A DNA stretch of 64,000 nucleotides from Haliotis rubra (taxonomy: Eukaryota): positions 5,642,001-5,706,000 of the forward strand of contig NW_025766968.1 of assembly GCF_003918875.1 (NCBI RefSeq), in the 5' to 3' direction. The notes under the pieces were generated by a model. It was not told where the DNA came from. It searched no databases and worked only from the letters and a program-made list of their open reading frames with translations. Both the position numbers and the translations under genes were made by a program. Each line of letters starts with the position of its first letter. Within the stretch, counting starts at the first letter, position 1. This document shows positions 3,000 to 24,720 of the stretch, piece after piece.

Positions 3000-3570
3000 A
3001 GCAAAACGACCTGTCATCTACATAGCACAAAGCAGAATGACGTGCTTGGTGTCAATCTGGAGTTCATGGGGAGGGGTCCACCGATTTGTTTTGGCCGAGT
3101 TGGTGTGTTGGCGCCGCAGACACAAACGCACTATTAGTAGAATATCTTGGAGCCAGGACCGGGGTACATTGATGGTGACTGTAAATTTGACTTTGTGATG
3201 ATCAAACAAAATCAGAATGGACAACGGGACATCACTGACATCCTAGACAGTGTTGTGCTACATTCCGATGACCATTCCGAAGGCCAGTCATCATGGACGA
3301 CAATGCCACATCGTGCACGTGCCGTTGGTGATTTCTTACGCCAAGAGGCAGTAGCAACTTTACCTTGGCCCACCTGCATATGGAGTCCGAGTCTAAATCC
3401 CATAGAGCATGTTTGGGACATCATCAGTCCCAGGTTACGCCAGAGAGATGCACCGGTACTAAGCCTTCCATCGAGAATGTATCGCAAAACCTCAACGTCA
3501 AATTAAACGTCTACTATAGTCTGGGATGACGATGATCAGTGATGTTATTGCATTTGGCGGGGGTTACTCC
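3000..3570 (+). mobile_element. Decayed Tc1/mariner transposase fragment
   Basis: PHRARAVGDFL...LPWP...SPSLNPIEHVWD, the Tc1 C-terminal DD34E motif region; frameshifted. Confidence 0.8.
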
Positions 3571-5913: not shown

Positions 5914-7311
5914 ATGGAGGCGTTAGGTATTTTGTTACTCGGTTCCATTTGTTGTGTGTCTGCGGGGCCAGTGAAGGTTACCAGTGTGAAAGACGAAATC
6001 AAAAGCCACCGCGCTGATGCGGAACGTATAATTAACCTGGTGGTCAATGGAAGTGCTAAAGGACAGACATACAACCGACTGGCCGAGTTTGTGGACACAT
6101 TCGGGAGTCGTATTGCGGGTTCTCAGAATCTTGAAAACGCCATTGATTACATGATGAAGAAGTTGAATGAGGATGATCTGGAGAATGTACACGGAGAGTC
6201 CGCCATGGTGCCCCACTGGGTGCGAGGGAAGGAGTCAGCCACCCTGGAGCAGCCACGGATCCTACCCCTCAACATACTGGGTCTTGGGGGTAGCATCGGC
6301 ACCCCTCCCGAGGGCATCACGGCTGAGGTCATTGTGGTCAAGACGTTTGACGAGTTGAAGCGGAGAGCTGCCGAGGCCCGCGGGAAGATAGTGGTGTACA
6401 ACGAGGACTGGGTAGGGTATGGAGCGACTGTCCAGTATCGTTCACTGGGAGCTGTGGAGGCGGCCAAAGTGGGTGCTGTGGCCTCTCTCATACGTAGTGT
6501 GACCCCCTTCTCTATAGACAGCCCCCACACCGGCTGGCAGGACTACAGCGACAACGTCACCAAGATACCTACAGCCTGCATCACGATAGAGATCGCCCAG
6601 ATGCTGCATAGGATGTCCTTGAGAGGGGAGAAGATCGTCATCAACCTCAAGATGGAAGCTCAGAACCTGCCCATGGTCAAGTCCAGGAACACAGTGGCTG
6701 AGATTAAGGGCAGTACATACCCGGATGAAGTCGTGATCGTGAGCGGCCACCTTGACAGCTGGGACGTGGGGCAGGGGGCGATGGACGACGGCGGCGGTGC
6801 CTTCATTTCCTGGCAGGCCCTGTCTCTCGTCCGCCAACTGGGACTTCGCCCTAAGCGTACCCTCAGGATGATCATGTGGACTGCAGAAGAAGAGGGGGTT
6901 TATGGAGCGAAGCAGTATTTCAAGGACCACCAGGACGAAATCCCCAAACACGATCTGGTGATGGAATCGGATCTCGGTACGTTCAACCCAAGAGGTCTCC
7001 AGTTCTCCGGCAACAAGGCAGCCACAGCTATCATGAAGGAGGTCGCCCAACTTCTCAGTTCCATCAACAGGACAACCCTCTACAGTCCCGCAGATGTCAG
7101 CGACACCGGTCTTTGGAAGAACATCGGTGTCCCAAGCGGCAGCATAGAGAACGACAACGAAAACTACTTCTACTTCCACCACAGCAACGGTGACATGATG
7201 ACAGTGGAGAACTCCGGCGTCCTTGACCTTTGTTCCGCCATCTGGGCAGTGGCGGCGTATGTGGTAGCTGACCTTGACGCTATGCTTCCACGGGACATTG
7301 TGAACGGTTGA
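5914..7311 (+). CDS. CPQ: Carboxypeptidase Q (M28 metallopeptidase), copy A; intronless CDS, 465 aa, signal peptide
   Basis: ATG at 5914 (gcaATGG) begins a hydrophobic signal peptide; the ORF-track start at 5842 is a TTG. PA domain (RGKIVVYN...ASLIRSV). M28 metal-binding and catalytic motifs SGHLDSWD, GAMDDG, WTAEEEG, MESD, FHHSNGD; C-terminal MLPR as in animal CPQ. Confidence 0.95.
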   Translation: MEALGILLLGSICCVSAGPVKVTSVKDEIKSHRADAERIINLVVNGSAKGQTYNRLAEFVDTFGSRIAGSQNLENAIDYMMKKLNEDDLENVHGESAMVPHWVRGKESATLEQPRILPLNILGLGGSIGTPPEGITAEVIVVKTFDELKRRAAEARGKIVVYNEDWVGYGATVQYRSLGAVEAAKVGAVASLIRSVTPFSIDSPHTGWQDYSDNVTKIPTACITIEIAQMLHRMSLRGEKIVINLKMEAQNLPMVKSRNTVAEIKGSTYPDEVVIVSGHLDSWDVGQGAMDDGGGAFISWQALSLVRQLGLRPKRTLRMIMWTAEEEGVYGAKQYFKDHQDEIPKHDLVMESDLGTFNPRGLQFSGNKAATAIMKEVAQLLSSINRTTLYSPADVSDTGLWKNIGVPSGSIENDNENYFYFHHSNGDMMTVENSGVLDLCSAIWAVAAYVVADLDAMLPRDIVNG

Positions 7312-7453
7312 CTATTTATTTCAAGGTAATACATGTTAAGCTTTAAAGTGTGTATGTCTGTAATATGTAACAACTGCCTAATTTTGTGTCTTATTAGATG
7401 TAACTTCATTTTGTTGCTGCAAATCTATTTCAAGTTGGTACATTTGGAAAGTA

Positions 7454-7611
7454 ACGTATTTCCTCTAATAAGCGCCCGGACGCTTATTTTTTCAACAGAC
7501 TTATTAGAGGCCAAGCGCTTATTGCGCTTACTGGGCGTAATTAATTATTTCTTAATCGCTGCTTAACCTCCGGCGCTTATTAGTTTCCGGCGCTTATTAG
7601 AGGAAATACGG
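7454..7611. mobile_element. Tc2/pogo-like MITE just downstream of CPQ copy A
   Basis: 22-bp TIR cgtatttcctctaataagcgcc (7455-7476 and 7589-7610), TA flanks, internal cgcttatt repeats. Confidence 0.8.
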
Positions 7612-7674
7612 TATATGTCCTTGCCGTCACAGGCTCTCGTGTCTTTGCGCAGATTCTTTAAAACTATATAAAAA

Positions 7675-7763
7675 TTTGAGATGACCCCCCGACTCTAAAT
7701 GCTCCACCATATGTCATGATGTATATGTACTGTGAAGCATTTCGAGTCCGGGGTCATCTCAAA
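7675..7763. repeat. Short inverted repeat (about 33-bp arms)
   Basis: tttgagatgacccc..gactc.aaatgct.cac pairs with gtgaagcatttcgagtccggggtcatctcaaa. Confidence 0.75.
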
Positions 7764-8203
7764 AACAATATTTTATTAATCTTTAATCCTCGCAAAGACA
7801 CGAGGGCATGTGCTCGGGGTACGTTTTCCACGTAGCATACAACTGCTCAAGCTCGAAAGATATTTCTGCTTCAATTATGACTTCGAAATCAACAGCGTAT
7901 ATTGCATACGATTTCCAAAGCCTGTGTTTGTTTTCTAGCTTGTTATATAACGCCGGCATGAGTCCCGCTCTGTGACAGCGGCCCATAATAATCGTGCCTG
8001 GACAGGGATTGATATCAAGAGCAATTCTCCACCCCATCGGGCTACGTTAACACGCCATCCGTCAAGCCCCCAAGCTGGGCCAAGCAATCCATTTGGTAGT
8101 CTTTTACAACACGCATATGTTACTAGGATTCGGGCCTGACCCGGAGGTACACCATGACTTCGTTGGTCATTTCAAACATCGTTCTGCTCGGTGTAGCGAA
8201 GAA

Positions 8204-8367
8204 GACTGATTGAGTATAGTTTTACGCGTCTTTTAGCAATATTCCAGCAATATCACGGCGGGGGACACCAGAAATGGGCTTAACAAATTGTACCCATGTC
8301 GGGAATCGAACCCGGATCTTCGGCGTGATGAGCAAACGCTTTAACCACTATGCAACCCCACCGCCCC
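8204..8367 (-). mobile_element. SINE family B
   Basis: Full-length match to family B. Confidence 0.85.
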
Positions 8368-8792
8368 AATGTAGCAAGGATGAAAAGTAGCGGTCAGATG
8401 CGTATCAGAGGTACCTATTACCAGTGTGTGCATTCTCAAGCCCGAAGCATCGTGTGGTAAGGCCTCCGACCTACATTCCCTATCTGTGTTTTCTGTACAG
8501 ATAATGTTGGCTCTAGAGGAAACACCCCGACTTCAGTGGTTCGACATTTGCGTGCATGTCGTTTGACCTTGTACTTACTTATACGTAAAACCCAAGATGT
8601 CTTTTGAGGTAAGCAGTCGGCTCACACTTAGTCTGATACGTAGTTCAAGAAATAAAGTCTTAAGGTTAAAAAATATATACCCTCAAAAAATGTATGACAC
8701 CAGGAGCCCAGAACAATGGCTGAGACTTGCCCAATCATTCTAGACTTGAGTTGGGCTCCTTTCTTAATACCTCGGGGATGGGAAACAGACTG

Positions 8793-9035
8793 AGTGAGTG
8801 AGTTTGGTTTTACGCCGCACTCAGCAATATTCCAGCTATATGGTGGCGGTCTGTAAATAATCGAGTCTGGACCAGACAATCCAGTGATCAACAGCATGAG
8901 CATCGATCTGCGCAATTAGGAACCGATGACATGTCTCAACCAAGTCAGCGAGCCTGACCACCCGATCCCGTTAGTCGCCTCTTACGACAAACATGGGTTA
9001 CTGAAGATCAATCCTAGCCCGGATCTTCACGGGTA
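8793..9035 (-). mobile_element. SINE-like family C (about 245 bp, no tRNA head)
   Basis: 13-bp TSD gggaaacagactg (8780-8792 and 9036-9048); (actc)n tail shared with family B. Confidence 0.9.
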
Positions 9036-9727
9036 GGGAAACAGACTGCTACATACTGGTGGGAAGACTGAACCAAAACTATCCGTGGTATGGACTCAAA
9101 CTGTTGCATTTCCTAGCAACACCGCATGATACAGGACTGCCCGCGCCCGCTGATGACACATGACATGATCATGAAGACAAAGAGAGGAACCAAGGAATTT
9201 ACACTGCATGCAGGGGATAAAACCCGTCGGGAAATTGTGGACCTTCATGGGTGTCATGGCCGTGAAAGGATTAGTGGAAACTATTCATTTGAGTGTTGTG
9301 GGATGTGTGCCCAGCACCCCATTTTATTTGGTGAAATGCCTTGGGCTGTGCCCCTGCTTCGGTGAGGGAAGGGAGCTGGTAGTTTAAGAATACTCGCTCC
9401 AGGAACGAGGTTCCACTAACACACTCCATTGACACTCGCTCCATTTAGAAGCGTAGTGGGATAGACCAGTACTATCACTCGGCCGGTCATGCCAAGCCCC
9501 GTGTACTATCTCCTTTAGCCTGGATTTGTCCTTATTCCATTATCATTTTGCAAATTATAAATGTCTGTTTAAATTCTTTTCAAATCGGATATACATGTTT
9601 TCGATATATGCAATATTTCTGAAATCCCCCAAAACGGTGGCTCATAGCTCATTGTGGTGGAACATTATATATAATGTTTCTGGCAAAGGGTACACTCTTG
9701 GTATTCTTGGTGCTGCTTGGGAGAAGA

Positions 9728-9890
9728 GTGAGTGAGTTTAGTTTTGAGCCGCTTTTGGCAATATTCCAGCAATATCACGGCGGGGGACACCAGAAATGGG
9801 CTTTACACGCTGTACCCATGTGGGGAATCGAACGCTGGTCTTCGGCGTGAAGAGCGAACGCTTTAACCACGGGACTTCCTCATCGTCCCT
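9728..9890 (-). mobile_element. SINE family B with TSD
   Basis: 12-bp TSD cttgggagaaga (9716-9727 and 9891-9902). Confidence 0.88.
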
Positions 9891-10606
9891 CTTGGGAGAA
9901 GAAAATACATGTAACAAAACAGAAGAATGATGTTCTTGCAAGAAGAACGGTCTGAGGCCTTCTCCAATAACGCACCCTGAAAGGCTATCATGCTAATGCC
10001 ATGGTAGCTTGAAGCTAAACCTCCAACTAAAATACTCCGGTATGTCTTTTAGAGCAATTGGTCGGGAAATGAAGGTCCACTATACAGTCCGTTTGATTTC
10101 ATTAGAGACCGATGAATTGCTCACAAACACAAAAATCAAATAAATGCAACAAAACCAAATTTTGTACAGTCACATGAAATCGACGACCAACTCTGATGAT
10201 TTGTCTCATAATTTTGGACACCCGAATAAAAAAGTTGTTTTACACACACAGTCATTTCACTGCCGCACACACATTATACACAGCTTTGTACTATGTGCAT
10301 TGGTCCCATTATGCTGGGCATATTTTGCATGATTGTGTTGATTTGTACTTATCACACAACGTTTTAATGATAATGTTCATATCTTATCCGGACGTTTCAG
10401 GAGAGTTTCTGACCACTTGAGTTAAATGTATGCAAAAGAAATCAATATTTGCGATAATTCATACTACCAACGCGAGAGGCATTAATATAGGCCATGTTCG
10501 GCCTGTTTGCCAATCCTTTTTGTTCGTTCTGTATTGTCTTTCAAATGTATTGTCTGTATTTAGAATAAATACTGTTTAAACCATATACCACTTTTTGTGT
10601 GCTTAA

Positions 10607-11365
10607 AGGTCACATGAAACGTAAAACACAACTTTGCAGATTATGATACCTTTCGGTATGGACTTACAATAACAAATTATCAAAAATGTAAATATAACTT
10701 ATAAAGTTGAAAAATAACGCGATGAAAAAAACCCCGCGAAATAGTTCAAACGATTCACTAAATGCACCCCACGCAGCTGGTGAAAAGTGGTTTCCACAGC
10801 TATGCTGCGCTGCACTGCGCTTATGGCGCATGCGCAGTGAATACGTTCGCACAGCTTGAAGCGGGGATTCCCGGATTATAAGGTCGTGAGCAGGAGTAGT
10901 CTAATCTTGGTTGTGTACACAATCACCAAATAGTGAATAATCTACTCGTTACATAAAAGAACCTTGTTAAGGATCTAGATTTACTCAGTTACGTGTCAAC
11001 CAGTGAAGCGTTCGACATTTCAAGACGGAAAACCGCCGGCGGTGAGTACTCGGGGTAGGCTTTGATGTGAGCTTTTTTTCTAATGTTTAACTGTTTATAT
11101 AATTTCATTTGACTATTTCACACGTTCTTTTTACGGAATCACTTTCTCAGTTCGACACTTAAAAGTAACGTCATTATTTAGCATTGTCAGAATTTCTAAC
11201 TGTGATATAGATATGCCTCTGACACAGACAAAACTCAATGTCTGTTTTATTGACACATGTGCGTCTGCCAGCCTGTCTGCTAATGACAATATGCAATACA
11301 CAACTTCGATCACTGACCTCATGCAATTTGAACTTAACACCTATCAGGCTATACACCATAAACAA
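10607..11365. mobile_element. Truncated copy of the Kolobok-like element
   Basis: ttaa-aggtcacatg start, colinear with 31694-32310; right end missing. Confidence 0.85.
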
Positions 11366-11768
11366 CTGTGATCTATCAGTTGTAATTGTTCGAATGTAAT
11401 ATTTATGTTACTGACTATTAGAACTATAACAAAACTTTGTTTACATCCAGTTAGACTAATGACCTTCCTTGTCGCGGACATCTGCAAACCTACTGGTGCT
11501 GCGTTACACAGTGCTCTCTTCATGCGGTGATTGAAGTGTATTGTCGAACAAACTAACAATGACAAAATCGAACAAACAGAATGGATATTTTATTAAAATT
11601 TGAAAAGTACATATCGCACAAAGGAACAGATGATATCAAGTGACTGATTGGCATTGAAAAGGTGCAAAACATTGACACACATTTTCCTTATCAAAATACT
11701 GTTGACTATGTACAACATTCGTGGATAATGGCCGACTCCGTAGTCCAGTGGATAGCGCGTCTGCCTAG

Positions 11769-12017
11769 AGAGTGAGTATGGTTTTACACCGTTTTAGTTC
11801 AAAGCAATATCACGGAGGGGACACTAGAAATGGGCTTTAAACATTGTACTCGTGTGAGGAATCGAACCCATTAGTCGTTAAAGCGTTCGCTCGTCTCGCT
11901 GAAGACCCGGGTTCGAATACCCACATTGGTACAATGTGGGAAGCCCATTTCTGGTGTCCCCCGTCGTGATACTGCTGAAACATTGCTAAAAGCGGCGTAA
12001 AACTGAACTCACTCACT
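11769..12017. mobile_element. Two abutting family B SINEs, head-to-head
   Basis: Minus copy about 11769-11869 and plus copy about 11871-12017. Confidence 0.8.
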
Positions 12018-13280
12018 TCACGTGACCGCACCCCCTCGGCAACACCGACATCATGTATCGGTACACGTTGGTGCATGCCCTCGGACACTACCAGACAGAG
12101 AGGAAAAATAAATACATTTACGAGTCCAATTATCCTGACTACTAAGATACACATTCTGGGAGAGAACGGTGACAGTTCAAGGGTTATGCTAGCAAACCAA
12201 GCCTATCGAGGAACTGATCATTTTCAGCAATTTTTCCACTGACAAAACATGTATTCGAGAATAATATCAACAGAATTCTGTTCAGAACAGCGTGTATGTC
12301 AATGTACTTCCACGCATGTAACATGTTATATCGCGGATTACACATTCTCAGTACCGACTCTCGTACTTTCGTTAGGATGAGTCCCATCCACACTCTGAGA
12401 GAGTGGGTTCGAATCCCGGATGTGACTCAAACTAACAAAGGTACTAGGATCTGTATTTTACTGAGACAGCGATCCAAAATATTACATGTTACATTTGAAC
12501 ACTTTCTAAATGGCATTGTGTATTCATACCTCCTCACGTATTATTTATTTATTATTATCATATCATACTTCCCCACGTATTATTTAATTTATCCTGTATG
12601 TAAATCTTAACACACACACTAATGTATTTTGTATCCTGTAGGTAAACTCGGGTGAAAGACACACACTCGTGAAAACGTTGATATATAACAGATTTAACTA
12701 AATAATTCTGCTCATGTACTCGGGCAGAAAAATATTGAATATACTCGCCGAAACAATCCATACATACAGCTGTTACCACGCATGTTCAGACAATAAACAT
12801 TGCAAAACATATTAACGTCCAGTACACCAAAGTTCAAAATTAGACTTGCATTCTGTGTCGAATAATTGTGCTTTCCAGAACTAAATACGAATAAGTTGTC
12901 GAACCATATTAACAAAACGGATCCTCCATGTATATGCGCATCAAATTTAGATGCAAATTTAACTAAATAATATATTATTGCAAACATGTGACCAGAGCTC
13001 TGCAACATACAATATCAATGCTAATGTTGTCAGACCCTACCTTTCAAACATTACTTCCATTCGCGACATCTGAGATTGAGCCAATACCGTGAGCTTGTCA
13101 CGATTGGTACCCTTTGAAACAGTGATCGAGTTGGTGTTATACCATGACAAACTAATGTGATCGTTGATTTCCAGGTTGTGCTATCGTGATTTAGGGGCGT
13201 TAACAGGAGTGGATATAATATGCAACATATTCGTACGAGCATCGTGACGCGTCGAAATCGGACGGATATGAACTACTTGA

Positions 13281-14690
13281 TCATAGTTGAAGTCGACCTT
13301 GTGCCGTATCCCTTGGGAGCAAGGTGTCAAGGTCAGCCACTACGTACGCCGCCACTGCCCAGATGGCGGAACAAAGATCAAGGACGCTGGAGTTCTCCAC
13401 CGTCATCATGTCTCCGTTGCTGTGGTGGAAGTAGAAGTAGTTTTCGTTGTCGTTCTCTATGCTGCCACTTGGGACACCGATATTTTCCCAAAGGGTAGTG
13501 TCACTGACATCTGCGGGACTGTAGAGGGTTGTCCTGTTGATGGAACTGAGAAGTTGGGCGACCTCCTTCATGATAGCTGTGGCTGCCTTGTTGCCGGAGA
13601 ACTGGAGACCTCTTGGGTTGAAGGTTCCCATGTCTGATTCCATTACCAAGCTCTGTTTTGGAATTTCAGCTTTGTGTTGTTTAAAGTACTCCTGTGCGCC
13701 CCAGAGCCCTTCTTCCTCCCCAGTCCACATGATCATCCTGAGGGTACGCTTAGGGCGAAGTCCCAGTTGGCGGACGAGAGACAGGGCCTGCCAGGAAATG
13801 AAGGCACCGCCGCCGTCGTCCATAGCCCCCTGCCCCACGTCCCAGCTGTCAAGGTGGCCGCTCACGATCACGACTTCATCCGGGTATGTACTGCCCTTAA
13901 TCTCAGCCACTGTGTTCCTGGACTTGACCATGGGCAGGTTCTGAGCTTCCATCTTGAGGTTGATGACGATCTTCTCCCCTCTCAAGGACATCCTATGCAG
14001 CATCTGGGCGATCTCTATCGTGATGCAGGCTGTAGGTATCTTGGTGACGTTGTCGCTGTAGTCCTGCCAGCCGGTGTGGGGGCTGTCTATAGAGAAGGGG
14101 GTCACACTACGTATGAGGGAGGCCACAGCACCCACTTTGGCCGCTTCCACAGCTCCCAGTGAACGATACTGGACAGTCGCTCCATACCCTACCCAGTCCT
14201 CGTTGTACACCACTATCTTCCCGCGGGCCTCGGCAGCTCTCCGCTTCAACTCGTCAAACGTCTTGACCACAATGACCTCAGCCGTGATGCCCTCGGGAGG
14301 GGTGCCGATGCTACCTCCAAGACCCAGTATGTTGAGGGGTAGGATCCGTGGCTGCTCCAGGGTGGCTGACTCCTTCCCTCGCACCCAGTGGGGCACCATG
14401 GCGGACTCTCCGTGTACATTCTCCAGATCATCCTCATTCAACTTCTTCATTATGTAATCAATGGCGTTTTCAAGATTCTGAGAACCCGCAATACGACTCC
14501 CGAATGTGTCCACAAACTCGGCCAGTCGGTTATATGTCTGTCCTTTAGCACTTCCATTGACCACCAGGTTAATTATTCGTTCCGCATCAGCACGGTGACT
14601 TTCGATTTCGTCTTTCACACTGTGGAAAGTTAGTGGGATCGAAAACACAGACACGAAAGCTACTGTTAACAGCAATAACGTAAACTCCAT
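13281..14690 (-). CDS. CPQ: Carboxypeptidase Q, copy B; intronless CDS, 469 aa, signal peptide
   Basis: Same motifs as copy A (SGHLDSWD, GAMDDG, WTGEEEG, MESD, FHHSNGD); different signal peptide MEFTLLLLTVAFVSVFS; inverted relative to copy A. Confidence 0.95.
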   Translation of the reverse strand: MEFTLLLLTVAFVSVFSIPLTFHSVKDEIESHRADAERIINLVVNGSAKGQTYNRLAEFVDTFGSRIAGSQNLENAIDYIMKKLNEDDLENVHGESAMVPHWVRGKESATLEQPRILPLNILGLGGSIGTPPEGITAEVIVVKTFDELKRRAAEARGKIVVYNEDWVGYGATVQYRSLGAVEAAKVGAVASLIRSVTPFSIDSPHTGWQDYSDNVTKIPTACITIEIAQMLHRMSLRGEKIVINLKMEAQNLPMVKSRNTVAEIKGSTYPDEVVIVSGHLDSWDVGQGAMDDGGGAFISWQALSLVRQLGLRPKRTLRMIMWTGEEEGLWGAQEYFKQHKAEIPKQSLVMESDMGTFNPRGLQFSGNKAATAIMKEVAQLLSSINRTTLYSPADVSDTTLWENIGVPSGSIENDNENYFYFHHSNGDMMTVENSSVLDLCSAIWAVAAYVVADLDTLLPRDTAQGRLQL

Positions 14691-16048: not shown

Positions 16049-16530
16049 GTCACACTAAGAAGGAGAGAGGCCACAGCACCCACTTTGACCGCCCCCACAG
16101 CTCCCAGTGAACAATACTGGACAGTCGCTCCATACCCTACCCAGTCCTCGTTATAGGTGAGGTGAAATTGGGTTTGACGTCGTACTTGAAAATATTTCGC
16201 TCATATGACGACGTGCATGCGTGTGTATATGTGTATGTGCGGCTGCTTGTACTAGCCCAGACTTAAGCTGGTTTTATAGTGCTAGCTCACTGAGATACCA
16301 TGCCGCAGTTAAGCATGAATACCCCACTCAGACACATTATACTGACTCCGAGCCGACCAGTCCATGTTGTACACATTAATGCCGAGCGCCAGACTGAGAC
16401 CAACAAGTACCATATTTTAACGTCTTTTAGTACGACGCGACCGGGGATCGAACCCGCGACCTTCCGCTCTCCGGGCGGACGCTCTAACCACTACACCACG
16501 GAGGCGGTCTCCTCGTTATAGACCACGATC
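16049..16530 (-). pseudogene. Short CPQ gene fragment (about 120 bp) interrupted by a SINE
   Basis: 16049-16156 plus 16522-16530 align to 14101-14217 of copy B and translate as IVVYNEDWVGYGATVQYCSLGAVGAVKVGAVASLLLSV. Confidence 0.88.
16157..16509 (-). mobile_element. SINE family A, full length, inserted in the CPQ fragment
   Basis: 12-bp TSD tcctcgttatag (16145-16156 and 16510-16521); same 5' end gaccgcctcc as the copy at 2530. Confidence 0.9.
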
Positions 16531-17289: not shown

Positions 17290-18415
17290 TTTCAACTTAA
17301 ACTGAGAATCAGTGTATCCGCGCTGTTGGTATGTTGGAGACCGGAATGGCCCAAAATGAAGTGGCCAGACATTTTGGTGTCAATCGAAACACGATCTCAG
17401 CTCTAAGGAGGTATATGCACTGTATGGAACCGACTGAAGGAGCACAACAGCCGGCCCCCACGACCTGCAATACGTCCAATTTTGCTCCAACGTCACCGAC
17501 AGGCACGTCTTGTCCGATGCAGACATCATCTACGGTACAGGAGACAAGATTGGGATAGCGGTTTCTTCACTGACGAGTCGAGATTTCATCAAGGCAGCTC
17601 AGATGGCAGGGCAAGGGTGTACAGACGGCTAGGTGAATGGTATGCTAACGCGTGCGTTGTTTAAAGTCGACAATTTGGTGTCGAAAGCGTTATATTATGG
17701 GGAAGCATCACATCTCATGGTCGGACACAACTTGTCATTGTCGATGACAAATTGACAGGTCTGCGATACAGGGTGAGATTACTGGGCCTCGTGTGCAGCC
17801 GTTCATTCAAAGACAGAGACTTAACTTCACAGTTCAGCAAGATAAATAATGCACGTCCACATGTCGCCCATGTTGTGACAGATTTTCTGAGACAGCAGAA
17901 TAGTCCGGTGCTCCCCTGGCCAGCTGTTTCTCCGGACCTGTCGGGAAGGTGAAATGGAGCGACGTGAAATGGAGAGACGTTTACGTCAAACCCAGAATCA
18001 GCCATTGACGTTAGATGAATTGGGACAAGCGTTGGTTCAGACATGGAACAACATTGAATTCCCAAAGCTTTCTTTAATCCCTTAGTGTCGTCTATGCGTC
18101 TGCACCAACGGCAATAGTGGACGCACACGAGTGGGTGAGTGAGTGAGTTTAGTTTTACGCCACATTCAGCAATATTCCAGCTATATGGCGGCGGTCTGTA
18201 AATAATTGAGTCTGGACCAGATAATCCAGTGATCAACAGCATGAGCATCGATCGGCGCAATTGGGAACCGATGACATTTGTCAACCAAGTCAGCGAGCCT
18301 GACACCCGATCCCGTTAGTCGCCTCTTACGACAAGCATAGTCGCCTTTTGTGGCAAGGTCGCTGAAGACCTATTCTACTCCGGATCTTCACGGGTCTGAC
18401 GCACACGATATAGAA
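17290..18415 (+). mobile_element. Decayed Tc1 transposase spanning HTH and DDE domains
   Basis: GMAQNEVARHFGVNRNTIS (HTH), FTDESRF, NARPHVAHVVTDFL, WPAVSPDLS across shifted frames; interrupted by a family C SINE. Confidence 0.88.
18131..18397 (-). mobile_element. SINE-like family C inserted at the 3' end of a Tc1 transposase
   Basis: 11-bp TSD gacgcacacga (18120-18130 and 18398-18408). Confidence 0.9.
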
Positions 18416-22670: not shown

Positions 22671-23129
22671 ATTGACTGCTCAGGATGATGGAGGTGGGGT
22701 ATGGAGTATTAACAACCTCATTCTAAGGACTTACCAATATACCTTCTTTGAGCGTCTGACTTCGAAACCCAGGGCTAATTATACTGAATACGGTATTCAT
22801 ACATGCTCGTATTAAAGGTACATACCCATTTCTGTGTTTTAAATTTTGGTGTTTGAGACTTACGTGATTAGTTAACTTTTGGTCATGTCTGTGACTTCAA
22901 AATGGAGAATGGATCTGCAAAGGGGTGTTGACAGGGTCTGTAGCTTTAATACCATTGACAGTGGTGCAGATGATTTTATTTTTTTCCACATTAACACCTT
23001 CATGAGCATGATATGGTTCAATTTGTTCCACTAACACTTGTATCATGCATGCATATTGCCATGGCGACTTCAGTCAGAATAGATCATTAGAACCTCATGC
23101 TTGTGATTGAGGATAGCTGACATTGTGAC

Positions 23130-24720
23130 AGAGTGGATCATAGCTGTCACATGACATGGATCACAGCTGTCCGTTAGACATGACATGGATCATAGCAGTC
23201 TGTCTGTCATGACATGGATCTTAGTCATCTCTCTGTCATGATATGGATCACAGCTATCTTTTTGTCATGACATGGAACATAGCTGCCTGTCATGACACGG
23301 CGGGGCGATGGGGTAGCCTAATGGTTAAAGCGTTGGCTCGTCACGTCGAAGACCAGGGTTCGATTCCCCACATGGGAACAATGTGTGAAGCCCATTTCTG
23401 GTGTACCCCGCCGTGATATTGCTGGAATATTGCTAAAAACGGCGTAAAACCATACTCTCTCACTCATTCACTCATGAGATGGATCATAGCTGTCTTTCTG
23501 TCATGACATGGATCATAGTTATCTGTCTGTCATGACATAGATCATAGTTATCTGTCTCTCATGACATGGATCACAGCTGTCTTTCTGTCATGACATGGAT
23601 CATAGTTATCTGTCTGTCATGACATGGATCACAGCTGTCTTTCTGTCATGACATAGATCATAGTTGTCAGTCTGTCATGACATGGAACATATCTGCCGTT
23701 CTGTCATGACATGAATCATAGTTATCTGTCATTATATGGATCATAGCTGTCTTTCTGTCATGACATGGAGCAGCTGTCAGTCAGGACATGGATCATAGCT
23801 GACATCTGGCATGGCATGGAACATAGCTGTCAGTCATGACATGAACATAGCTGTCTTCTGTCATGACATGGATCATAGTTATTTGTCTGTCATGACATGG
23901 ATCACAGCTGTCTTTCTGTCATGACATGGATCATAGTTATCTGTCTGTCATGACATGGATCACAGCTGTCTTTCTGTCATGACATAGATCATAGTTGTCA
24001 GTCTGTCATGACATGGAACATATCTGCCGTTCTGTCATGACATGAATCATAGTTATCTGTCATTATATGGATCATAGCTGTCTTTCTGTCATGACATGGA
24101 GCAGCTGTCAGTCAGGACATGGATCATAGCTGACATCTGGCATGGCATGGAACCAAGCTGTCAGTCATGACATGAACATAGCTGTCTTCTGTCATGACAT
24201 GGATCATAGTTATTTGTCATGTCATGACATGGATCATAGCTGTCTTTCTGTCATGACATGGATCATAGATGTCTGTCCGTCATGACATGGATCATAGCTG
24301 TCTTTCTGTCATGACATGGATCATAGTTATCTGTCAGTCATGACATGGATCATAGCTGATCTGTTTCTGTCATGACATGGATCATAGTTATCTGTCCGTC
24401 ATGACATGGATCATAGCTGTCTTTATGTCATGACATGGATCATAGTTATCTGTCTGTCATGACATGGATCATAGCTGTCTTCTGTCATGACATGGATCAT
24501 AGTTATCTGTCTGTCATGACATGGATCACAGCTGTCTTTCTGTCATGACATGGATCATAGCTGTCTTCTGTCATGACATGGATCATAGATGTCAGTCATG
24601 ACATGGCTCATAGCAGTTTATAAGAGATGGATCATAGTTGTCTTTCTGTCCTGGATCATATCTGTCTAATATGGATCACATAACTATATGTCTGTCTTGG
24701 ATCATAGCTGTCTGTCAGCC
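23130..24720. repeat. 29-bp satellite in the first SNUPN coding intron
   Basis: Unit gtcatgacatggatcatagctgtctttct with palindromic core TGTCATGACA. Confidence 0.95.
23300..23473 (+). mobile_element. SINE family B inserted in the 29-bp satellite
   Basis: Complete head, body and tail, with satellite units on both sides. Confidence 0.88.

What the first reader, a model, noticed from the sequence alone, without database searches (positions are those of the whole stretch)
5984..14622. Possible invertible cassette that swaps catalytic halves between two promoters and signal peptides
Seen: about 900-bp near-perfect inverted repeats lie between each copy's unique 5' part and its divergent catalytic island, and enclose a spacer of about 6 kb. 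Established: a crossover between inverted repeats inverts the enclosed segment. Inference: a flip would give two in-frame chimaeras (promoter and signal peptide A with active site B, and the reverse), so the locus could be an inversion polymorphism or somatic switch. No recombinase is present, so this would depend on homologous recombination.
Basis: inference. Interest (0 to 1): 0.7.

Follow-up and report, generated by a model that had tools for sequence, protein, structure and literature searches.

The report
Converging abalone peptidase gene pair
Two tail-to-tail copies of an abalone carboxypeptidase Q gene are kept almost identical over most of their length by gene conversion, and although a flip between them is geometrically possible, three abalone species all show the same unflipped arrangement, so this is an ordinary conserved inverted gene pair rather than a demonstrated switch.

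Summary
Two intronless carboxypeptidase Q-like (M28) genes, A (5914-7311, +) and B (13281-14690, -), converge on a 5,969-bp repeat-rich spacer. Their coding sequences form a 1.36-kb inverted repeat with a mosaic of identity:
- 5' end: ~56%
- tract 1 (871 bp): 99.2%
- island (98 bp): 64%
- tract 2 (119 bp): 100%
- tail: 86%

However, each chimaera differs from its 3' parent at only 19 residues, 17 of them in the signal-peptide region. A flip would therefore swap promoter and signal peptide, not create new enzymes.

The same pair exists in Haliotis rufescens and H. cracherodii. Tract 1 evolves in concert within each species (55 concerted, 0 orthologous, 0 crossed sites). The 5' end, island, tail and flanks are strictly orthologous, and the spacer has the same orientation in all three assemblies.

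The best explanation is an old inverted duplicate pair homogenised by non-crossover gene conversion. A rare inversion polymorphism is not excluded. A somatic switch has no support, and no recombinase is present. Earlier first-reader notes of this scan on the same stretch describe the mosaic and the island, and I reproduced both.

The parts
5914..7311 (+). Gene A: intronless carboxypeptidase Q-like gene, 465 aa (P0002)
   Evidence: ORF. Pfam Peptidase_M28 E=9e-32. 58-68% identical to CPQ of molluscs, cnidarians and vertebrates.
13281..14690 (-). Gene B: intronless carboxypeptidase Q-like gene, 469 aa (P0121), convergent with A
   Evidence: ORF. Pfam Peptidase_M28 E=6e-33. 95% identical to H. 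rufescens XP_046350835.
5914..6012 (+). Copy-specific 5' end of A (signal peptide and first residues). B counterpart is 14592-14690.
   Evidence: 56% A/B identity. 20 orthologous vs 2 concerted sites. Hydrophobic N-terminus.
6013..6883 (+). Tract 1 of A, the homogenised inverted repeat. B counterpart is 13721-14591.
   Evidence: 7 differences in 871 bp. 55 concerted, 0 orthologous, 0 crossed sites. dS 0.035 between paralogues vs 0.29-0.32 between species.
6884..6981 (+). Divergent island of A (residues 324-356: catalytic Glu-Glu loop, two short helices, strand to the Asp353 ligand). B counterpart is 13623-13720.
   Evidence: 64% identity. 24 orthologous, 0 concerted sites. Synonymous sites saturated, dN 0.2. 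First and last differing base identical in three species. Secondary structure from the model.
6982..7100 (+). Tract 2 of A, second homogenised block. B counterpart is 13504-13622.
   Evidence: 100% identical in this genome. 7 concerted, 0 orthologous sites.
7101..7311 (+). Tail of A, partly converted 3' end. B counterpart is 13281-13503.
   Evidence: 86% identity. 11 orthologous and 5 concerted sites.
7312..13280 (.). Intergenic spacer between the two stop codons, rich in interspersed repeats
   Evidence: SINE-like copies at 8200-8367, 8791-8994, 9722-9889 and 11872-12017. Dispersed ~760-bp repeat at about 10603-11366 with dozens of genomic copies. Seven short unique blocks collinear and in the same orientation as in H. 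rufescens.
16049..16155 (-). 107-bp fragment of the CPQ coding sequence (from tract 1), abutting a repeat copy at 16155-16510
   Evidence: 93% identical to A and 92% to B. Absent from the equivalent place in H. rufescens and H. cracherodii.

Best explanation
The locus is an old inverted (tail-to-tail) duplication of an intronless carboxypeptidase Q gene. It arose in the abalone lineage well before H. rubra separated from the Californian abalones.

The two arms still interact by homologous recombination. Non-crossover gene conversion repeatedly overwrites most of the coding sequence (tract 1, tract 2 and part of the tail), independently in each lineage. This keeps those parts about 99% identical within a genome.

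Three parts escape conversion and stay copy-specific: the promoter and signal-peptide end, a 98-bp island around the catalytic Glu-Glu loop, and the extreme 3' end. The reason is either selection keeping two isozyme types or the dense mismatches themselves blocking heteroduplex extension (inferred).

A crossover in tract 1 would invert about 6.8 kb and exchange promoter and signal peptide between the two enzyme bodies. The arrangement seen is the same parental one in every available haplotype, so such crossovers are rare, selected against, or both.

Shown: the anatomy, concerted evolution, the conserved linkage and spacer orientation, and the in-frame outcome of a crossover. Inferred: that conversion is non-crossover, and why the island is spared.
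For: - Inverted repeat and mosaic.
- M28/CPQ identity.
- Same convergent pair in H. rufescens (L005) and H. cracherodii (L006).
- Quartet site patterns, given as orthologous/concerted/crossed: tract 1 0/55/0; tract 2 0/7/0; island 24/0/1; 5' end 20/2/0; tail 11/5/0. The flanks are orthologous.
- dS between paralogues in tract 1 is 0.03-0.035, against 0.29-0.32 between species. Island dS is saturated, while island dN between species is only 0.013-0.025.
- The residual tract 1 differences lie at different sites in each species, and the island boundaries are identical to the base, 6884 and 6981.
- The spacer is collinear and in the same orientation in all three species.
- GC3 is 0.65-0.70 in converted tracts, against 0.48-0.61 in the 5' end and island and 0.51 in the third paralogue. 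This fits long-term GC-biased conversion.
- A and B form one clade with 100/100 support.
Against: Only three haplotypes are available, and two of the species are close relatives. If flipping were frequent and neutral, agreement of all three would still occur with probability about 0.25-0.5. The comparison therefore disfavours frequent flipping only about 2-4 fold.

Gene conversion shows that the arms do pair, and in other systems some such events resolve as crossovers. In primate X palindromes, about half of the spacers are inverted between species (PMC8327919).

Expression of either gene was not tested.
Confidence: 0.8

Rival explanations
1. Recurrent inversion polymorphism ('flip-flop'). Crossovers in the 871-bp tract occasionally invert the 6.8-kb segment in the germ line. 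Abalone populations would then carry both orientations and four gene forms (A, B, A5'-B3', B5'-A3').
For: The geometry and reading frame allow it. Ongoing arm-to-arm conversion proves that the arms recombine. There are precedents with comparable or larger repeats: the yeast FF region (PMC9731477), primate X palindromes (PMC8327919), and human inversions mediated by inverted repeats, including one that exchanges the first exons of AQP12A and AQP12B and one whose likely breakpoint is a 782-bp tract at 99.9% (PMC3961182).
Against: All three assemblies show the parental linkage and the same spacer orientation. There are no crossed site patterns in the 5' end, tract 1, tract 2, tail or 3' flank; the island has 1 and the 5' flank 2. 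No chimaeric protein occurs among the database clusters above 70% identity, which hold five proteins, all parental. No alternative haplotig is present in this assembly.
Confidence: 0.15
2. Programmed or somatic switch: the segment is flipped within an animal, in some tissues or conditions, to re-pair promoters with enzyme bodies.
For: Only the geometry supports it.
Against: The window contains no recombinase and no short specific recombination sites. Pfam finds only sub-threshold DDE_3 and HTH remnants of transposons. The repeats are simply coding sequence. A chimaera's mature protein would be almost identical to its parent, so little would be gained. Even the yeast flip-flop region is stable over about 53,800 mitoses and 950 meioses (PMC9731477).
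Confidence: 0.02
3. Artefact: the near-identity of tract 1 comes from assembly or polishing that collapsed two paralogues, or from protein-level constraint alone, with no recombination between the arms.
For: Polishing hybrid assemblies with short reads can homogenise paralogues, and the segment encodes conserved protein.
Against: The same mosaic, with boundaries identical to the base, appears in three separate genome records from three species. 55 mostly synonymous species-specific substitutions are shared by A and B, which constraint on the protein cannot produce. Patella's pair has the same conserved protein segment but much lower third-position identity.
Confidence: 0.02

Closest known systems
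Palindromes with arm-to-arm gene conversion (primate X and Y chromosome palindromes; PMC8327919, PMC8600007)
   Same: Inverted arms carry paralogous genes around a unique spacer. Arm-to-arm identity within a genome exceeds identity between species, which is concerted evolution. The structure is conserved across species. NAHR within a chromatid would invert the spacer.
   Different: The arms here are only 1.4 kb, not tens of kb to over a Mb. Each arm is a single coding sequence. Homogenisation is interrupted by a sharply bounded, conserved 98-bp island. Spacer orientation is conserved in all comparisons here, against about 50% inverted between primate species.
Saccharomyces chromosome XIV 'flip/flop' region (Salzberg et al. 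2022, PMC9731477)
   Same: Inverted paralogous genes are continually homogenised by gene conversion within each species. Inversion depends on homologous recombination, with no dedicated recombinase. The region is stable on short timescales.
   Different: In yeast both orientations are documented within every species, the repeats are 4 kb, and the breakpoints do not create chimaeric genes with different bodies. Here only one orientation has been seen.
[quoted passage not shown] 2014, PMC3961182), e.g. HsInv0241 exchanging the first exons of AQP12A and AQP12B
   Same: A crossover inside inverted paralogous genes would exchange their 5' parts, where most of the differences lie, with little change to the proteins. 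High-identity tracts of about 0.8 kb are plausible breakpoints.
   Different: Those inversions were genotyped in populations. Here inversion is only a possibility.
Site-specific invertible switches (bacterial invertases, shufflons)
   Same: The outcome would be formally similar: inversion re-pairs 5' and 3' gene parts.
   Different: There is no recombinase and no short specific sites. This is a eukaryotic nuclear locus, and the repeats are ordinary homologous coding sequence.

Membership tests
Peptidase M28 / carboxypeptidase Q (CPQ, plasma glutamate carboxypeptidase) | M28 catalytic domain | tested here: met
   Pfam PF04389 at E=9e-32 for A and 6e-33 for B, well above the cut-off. The best solved relative is 3IIB, 'Peptidase M28', E=2e-66.
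Peptidase M28 / carboxypeptidase Q (CPQ, plasma glutamate carboxypeptidase) | Two-zinc site: His, bridging Asp, catalytic Glu followed by ligand Glu, Asp, His | tested here: met
   H279, D291, E325, E326, D353 and H423 are invariant columns in a 59-sequence CPQ alignment and are identical in A and B. Assigning them as ligands rests on established knowledge of M28 enzymes, not on a structure with metal.
Peptidase M28 / carboxypeptidase Q (CPQ, plasma glutamate carboxypeptidase) | Full-length orthology-level similarity to named CPQ proteins | tested here: met
   58-68% identity over 92-99% of the length to CPQ of molluscs, cnidarians, echinoderms and vertebrates.
Peptidase M28 / carboxypeptidase Q (CPQ, plasma glutamate carboxypeptidase) | N-terminal secretion signal | tested here: inconclusive
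   A hydrophobic stretch covers about residues 2-17 in both copies, modelled as a helix followed by a low-confidence linker. No dedicated signal-peptide predictor was available.
Palindrome / inverted paralogue pair under arm-to-arm gene conversion | Inverted arms around a unique spacer | tested here: met
Palindrome / inverted paralogue pair under arm-to-arm gene conversion | Paralogues within a genome are more alike than orthologues between species (concerted evolution) | tested here: met
   Tract 1 is 99.2% identical within the genome against 92-93% between H. rubra and H. rufescens. There are 55 concerted and 0 orthologous sites. The residual differences are lineage-specific.
Inversion polymorphism mediated by inverted repeats (NAHR) | High-identity inverted repeats long enough for homologous recombination | tested here: met
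   871 bp at 99.2%, without indels.
Inversion polymorphism mediated by inverted repeats (NAHR) | Both orientations observed among haplotypes or species | tested here: not met
   One orientation in three assemblies of three species. No second haplotig.
Site-specific invertible switch | Dedicated recombinase gene at or near the element | tested here: not met
   Of the 8 ORFs of 160 aa or more in the window, four are the two CPQ frames and their antisense overlaps, and the other four gave no recombinase hit in Pfam. The smaller flanking ORFs gave only a DDE_3 hit at 18 bits (cut-off 28.6) and weak HTH hits.
Site-specific invertible switch | Mixed orientations within one DNA sample | not testable with these tools

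The most novel reading that the evidence does not exclude
The pair is a natural flip-flop locus in abalone populations. Rare crossovers in tract 1 repeatedly re-pair two promoters and signal peptides with two enzyme bodies. The distinct 33-residue segments of those bodies, around the catalytic glutamates, are protected from conversion by selection. Individuals would then differ in which isozyme is made where.
Probability: 0.15. Interest if true: 0.45.

Novelty: new member of a known kind. Interest (0 to 1): 0.3.

Why it matters
The locus is a clean small-scale example of concerted evolution in an invertebrate. Gene conversion between inverted paralogues homogenises most of a gene independently in separate lineages, yet stops at the same nucleotides on either side of a 98-bp island next to the active site. 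That could serve as a compact model for how duplicated genes keep functional differences despite conversion. It also flags a site where short-read variant calls, PCR and transcript assemblies in abalone will be unreliable. The proposed inversion would matter only modestly if real, because it would exchange regulatory and signal regions rather than create new enzymes.

Tried and rejected
2. Alternative haplotig in the same assembly. Protein and spacer-DNA searches of G000 found only the locus itself, plus the 66% paralogue, the short fragment and dispersed repeats.
3. Chimaeric proteins in public collections. The only clusters above 70% identity hold five proteins, all parental. Shorter fragments were not searched, because de Bruijn assemblies are expected to break at the identical tracts.
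4. Island imported from the third paralogue: rejected. Neither island resembles the paralogue C sequence, and A and B share residues (EIPK) that C and Patella lack.
5. Fast evolution or positive selection in the island: rejected. Synonymous sites are saturated, dN/dS is well below 1, and each island type is conserved between species.
6. Recent retrogene origin as the reason for the missing introns: rejected as something special. Patella's CPQ genes and abalone paralogue C are also single-exon.
7. Patella's convergent pair as the orthologue of A/B: not supported by the tree.
8. No paper mentions carboxypeptidase Q in Haliotis.
9. No fold search was run on the structure model, because sequence already identifies the family.
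Full report
**What is there**

The window is eukaryotic, with about 40% G+C, many SINE-like repeats and no N. It belongs to an abalone. The best protein matches are Haliotis, and the third paralogue of the same genome is named Haliotis rubra in the source records, while the window's own proteins are anonymised. The genome has 1.378 Gb in 2,855 contigs.

The repeat finder gives inverted arms at 5955-7313 and 13291-14649: 1,359 nt at 94%, 5,977 nt apart. Each arm is almost exactly one open reading frame:
- Gene A: 5914-7311 on the + strand, 465 aa.
- Gene B: 13281-14690 on the - strand, 469 aa.

Both are uninterrupted, and both hit Pfam Peptidase_M28 (E about 1e-32). Both are 58-68% identical over their full length to carboxypeptidase Q of molluscs, cnidarians, echinoderms and vertebrates. 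The genes converge: their stop codons face each other across a 5,969-bp spacer (7312-13280) made largely of interspersed repeats.

**The mosaic**

Identity along the arms is strongly non-uniform:

| Segment | Window coordinates (gene A) | A/B identity |
|---|---|---|
| 5' end | 5914-6012 | 56% |
| Tract 1 | 6013-6883 | 99.2% (7 differences in 871 bp, no indels) |
| Island | 6884-6981 | 64% |
| Tract 2 | 6982-7100 | 100% |
| Tail | 7101-7311 | 86% |
| Flanks | outside the genes | unrelated |

The contrast between the island and tract 1 is far beyond chance (Fisher p = 4e-31). The corrections are that the repeat is the coding sequence itself, that the genes are tail-to-tail, and that homology resumes after the island.

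**Comparison with other abalones**

H. rufescens carries the same convergent pair 7.1 kb apart (L005). H. cracherodii carries it 6.7 kb apart (L006). Its copy B is intact but was not called by the annotators.

For the H. rubra / H. rufescens quartet I counted three kinds of informative site:
- Orthologous: A matches A and B matches B across species.
- Concerted: A matches B within each species.
- Crossed: A of one species matches B of the other.

| Segment | Orthologous | Concerted | Crossed |
|---|---|---|---|
| 5' flank | 42 | 4 | 2 |
| 5' end | 20 | 2 | 0 |
| Tract 1 | 0 | 55 | 0 |
| Island | 24 | 0 | 1 |
| Tract 2 | 0 | 7 | 0 |
| Tail | 11 | 5 | 0 |
| 3' flank | 18 | 1 | 0 |

Further points:
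- Synonymous divergence between paralogues in tract 1 is 0.03-0.035, against 0.29-0.32 between the species.
- The few remaining tract 1 differences lie at different positions in each species, so they are new mutations since the last homogenisation.
- The H. rufescens / H. cracherodii quartet shows 3 orthologous and 4 concerted sites in tract 1, so conversion has continued on the timescale of that recent split.
- The first and last differing bases of the island are the same, 6884 and 6981, in all three species.
- Within the island, synonymous sites between A and B are saturated. dN is about 0.2, and each island type is conserved between species (dN 0.013-0.025). The island is therefore old and constrained, not fast-evolving.
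- GC3 is 0.65-0.70 in the converted tracts, 0.48-0.61 in the 5' end and island, and 0.51 in paralogue C. This is compatible with GC-biased conversion but is only suggestive.

**What this says about the flip**

A crossover inside tract 1 would invert everything between the two crossover points: island, tract 2 and tail of both genes, plus the spacer. That would attach 5' end A to island B and the reverse. I simulated crossovers every 10 bp through tract 1.

The consequence is smaller than the title suggests:
- The chimaera A5'-B3' differs from parental B at 19 residues. Seventeen lie in residues 3-23, the hydrophobic signal region and the few residues after it. The other two are K30E and M80I.
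- All zinc-ligand and catalytic residues (H279, D291, E325, E326, D353, H423) are invariant across 59 CPQ sequences and identical in A and B.
- A flip would therefore exchange promoter and signal peptide between two enzyme bodies. It would not build new active sites.
- From memory and unverified here: human CPQ is annotated with a signal peptide and a short propeptide. If the same holds in abalone, the mature chimaeras would be nearly identical to the parents.

**Evidence on whether flips occur**

- Every available haplotype has the parental linkage of 5' flank, 5' end, island, tail and 3' flank.
- H. rufescens and H. cracherodii are collinear through the whole spacer. Between H. rubra and H. 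rufescens, seven short unique spacer blocks all align in the same orientation and order.
- The protein collection holds only five proteins more than 70% identical, all parental.
- This assembly has no second haplotig of the locus.
- In primate X palindromes, about half of the spacers are inverted between species (PMC8327919). Here none of roughly two independent comparisons is.

This is modest evidence, about 2-4 fold against frequent neutral flipping. It does not exclude a rare polymorphism. Precedents show such polymorphisms are plausible:
- The yeast chromosome XIV flip/flop region is flanked by continually homogenised inverted paralogues, yet is stable over about 53,800 mitoses and 950 meioses (PMC9731477).
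- Among human inversions mediated by inverted repeats, one exchanges the first exons of AQP12A and AQP12B, and another has a likely breakpoint in a 782-bp tract at 99.9% (PMC3961182).

**Recombinase and switch**

Of the 8 ORFs of 160 aa or more in the window, four are the two CPQ frames and their antisense overlaps. Pfam scans of the other four, and of the smaller flanking ORFs, found no recombinase. The only hits were a sub-threshold DDE_3 match (18 bits against a cut-off of 28.6) at 3147-3506 and weak HTH matches at 17331-17558. These look like decayed Tc1/mariner-like elements. Nothing suggests a programmed or somatic mechanism.

**Origin**

In a 23-sequence maximum-likelihood tree, abalone A and B form one clade (100/100). 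They are separate from abalone paralogue C, which lies on another contig, is 466 aa and is intact. The island's saturated synonymous sites place the A/B duplication well before the H. rubra / H. rufescens split.

The limpet Patella vulgata also has two single-exon CPQ genes, convergent and about 1.7 kb apart (L007). They are 76% identical, with patches of raised third-position identity: up to 0.95 around residues 288-307, against a background of 0.3-0.5. In the tree, Patella_1 groups with Lottia and excludes Patella_2, so that duplication is separate from the abalone one.

**Structure**

An AlphaFold2 model of A, built from the 59-sequence alignment, has mean pLDDT 89.5. It places the island on the loop carrying E325 and E326, two short helices (330-338 and 340-345), and the strand (346-351) leading to D353.

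**Limits**

No reads, no expression data and no population data were examined.
- Signal peptides were judged only from hydrophobicity.
- Why the island escapes conversion is inferred, not tested. Selection and mismatch-dependent rejection of heteroduplex are both possible.

**Verdict**

This is a real and neatly structured inverted paralogue pair under ongoing gene conversion, conserved in at least three abalone species. The invertible-cassette idea is mechanically valid but unsupported by the available haplotypes, and its effect would be a promoter and signal-peptide swap. It is a new member of a known kind and of modest interest.

Noticed in passing
L007:3001-4473 (+) and L007:6147-7473 (-): Patella vulgata also has two single-exon CPQ genes in convergent orientation, about 1.7 kb apart and 76% identical. 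Third-codon-position identity is raised in patches (up to 0.95 near residues 288-307), which suggests older, partial gene conversion. The tree indicates a duplication separate from the abalone one.
   Followed up: partly
window 16049-16155, next to 16155-16510 and 2529-2891: A 107-bp fragment of the CPQ coding sequence (from tract 1; 93% identical to A, 92% to B; carries the H. rubra-specific 'YGATV') sits 1.4 kb upstream of gene B. It abuts one copy of a 363-bp repeat whose other copy lies inverted at 2529-2891. The fragment is absent from the same place in H. rufescens and H. cracherodii.
   Followed up: partly
L006:18074-19483 (-): Copy B of H. cracherodii is an intact 469-aa ORF (98.5% identical in DNA to H. 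rufescens B), but no gene was called there in the record's annotation.
   Followed up: partly
window 5914-7311, 13281-14690; L003:1507-2904: All three CPQ genes of this abalone, and both of Patella, are single-exon. GC3 is 0.65-0.70 in the converted tracts of A and B, against 0.51 in paralogue C. This is a possible trace of GC-biased gene conversion.
   Followed up: partly
window 23116-24000 (continuing to about 24700): A long minisatellite with a 29-bp period. A similar array lies at the corresponding flank in H. rufescens (L005:82-730).
   Followed up: no
window 3147-3506 (+) and 17331-17558 (+): Decayed Tc1/mariner-like transposase remnants (sub-threshold DDE_3 and HTH hits) lie on either side of the gene pair.
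   Followed up: partly
window about 10603-11366: A dispersed repeat of about 760 bp in the middle of the spacer has dozens of copies at 78-92% identity across the genome.
   Followed up: no
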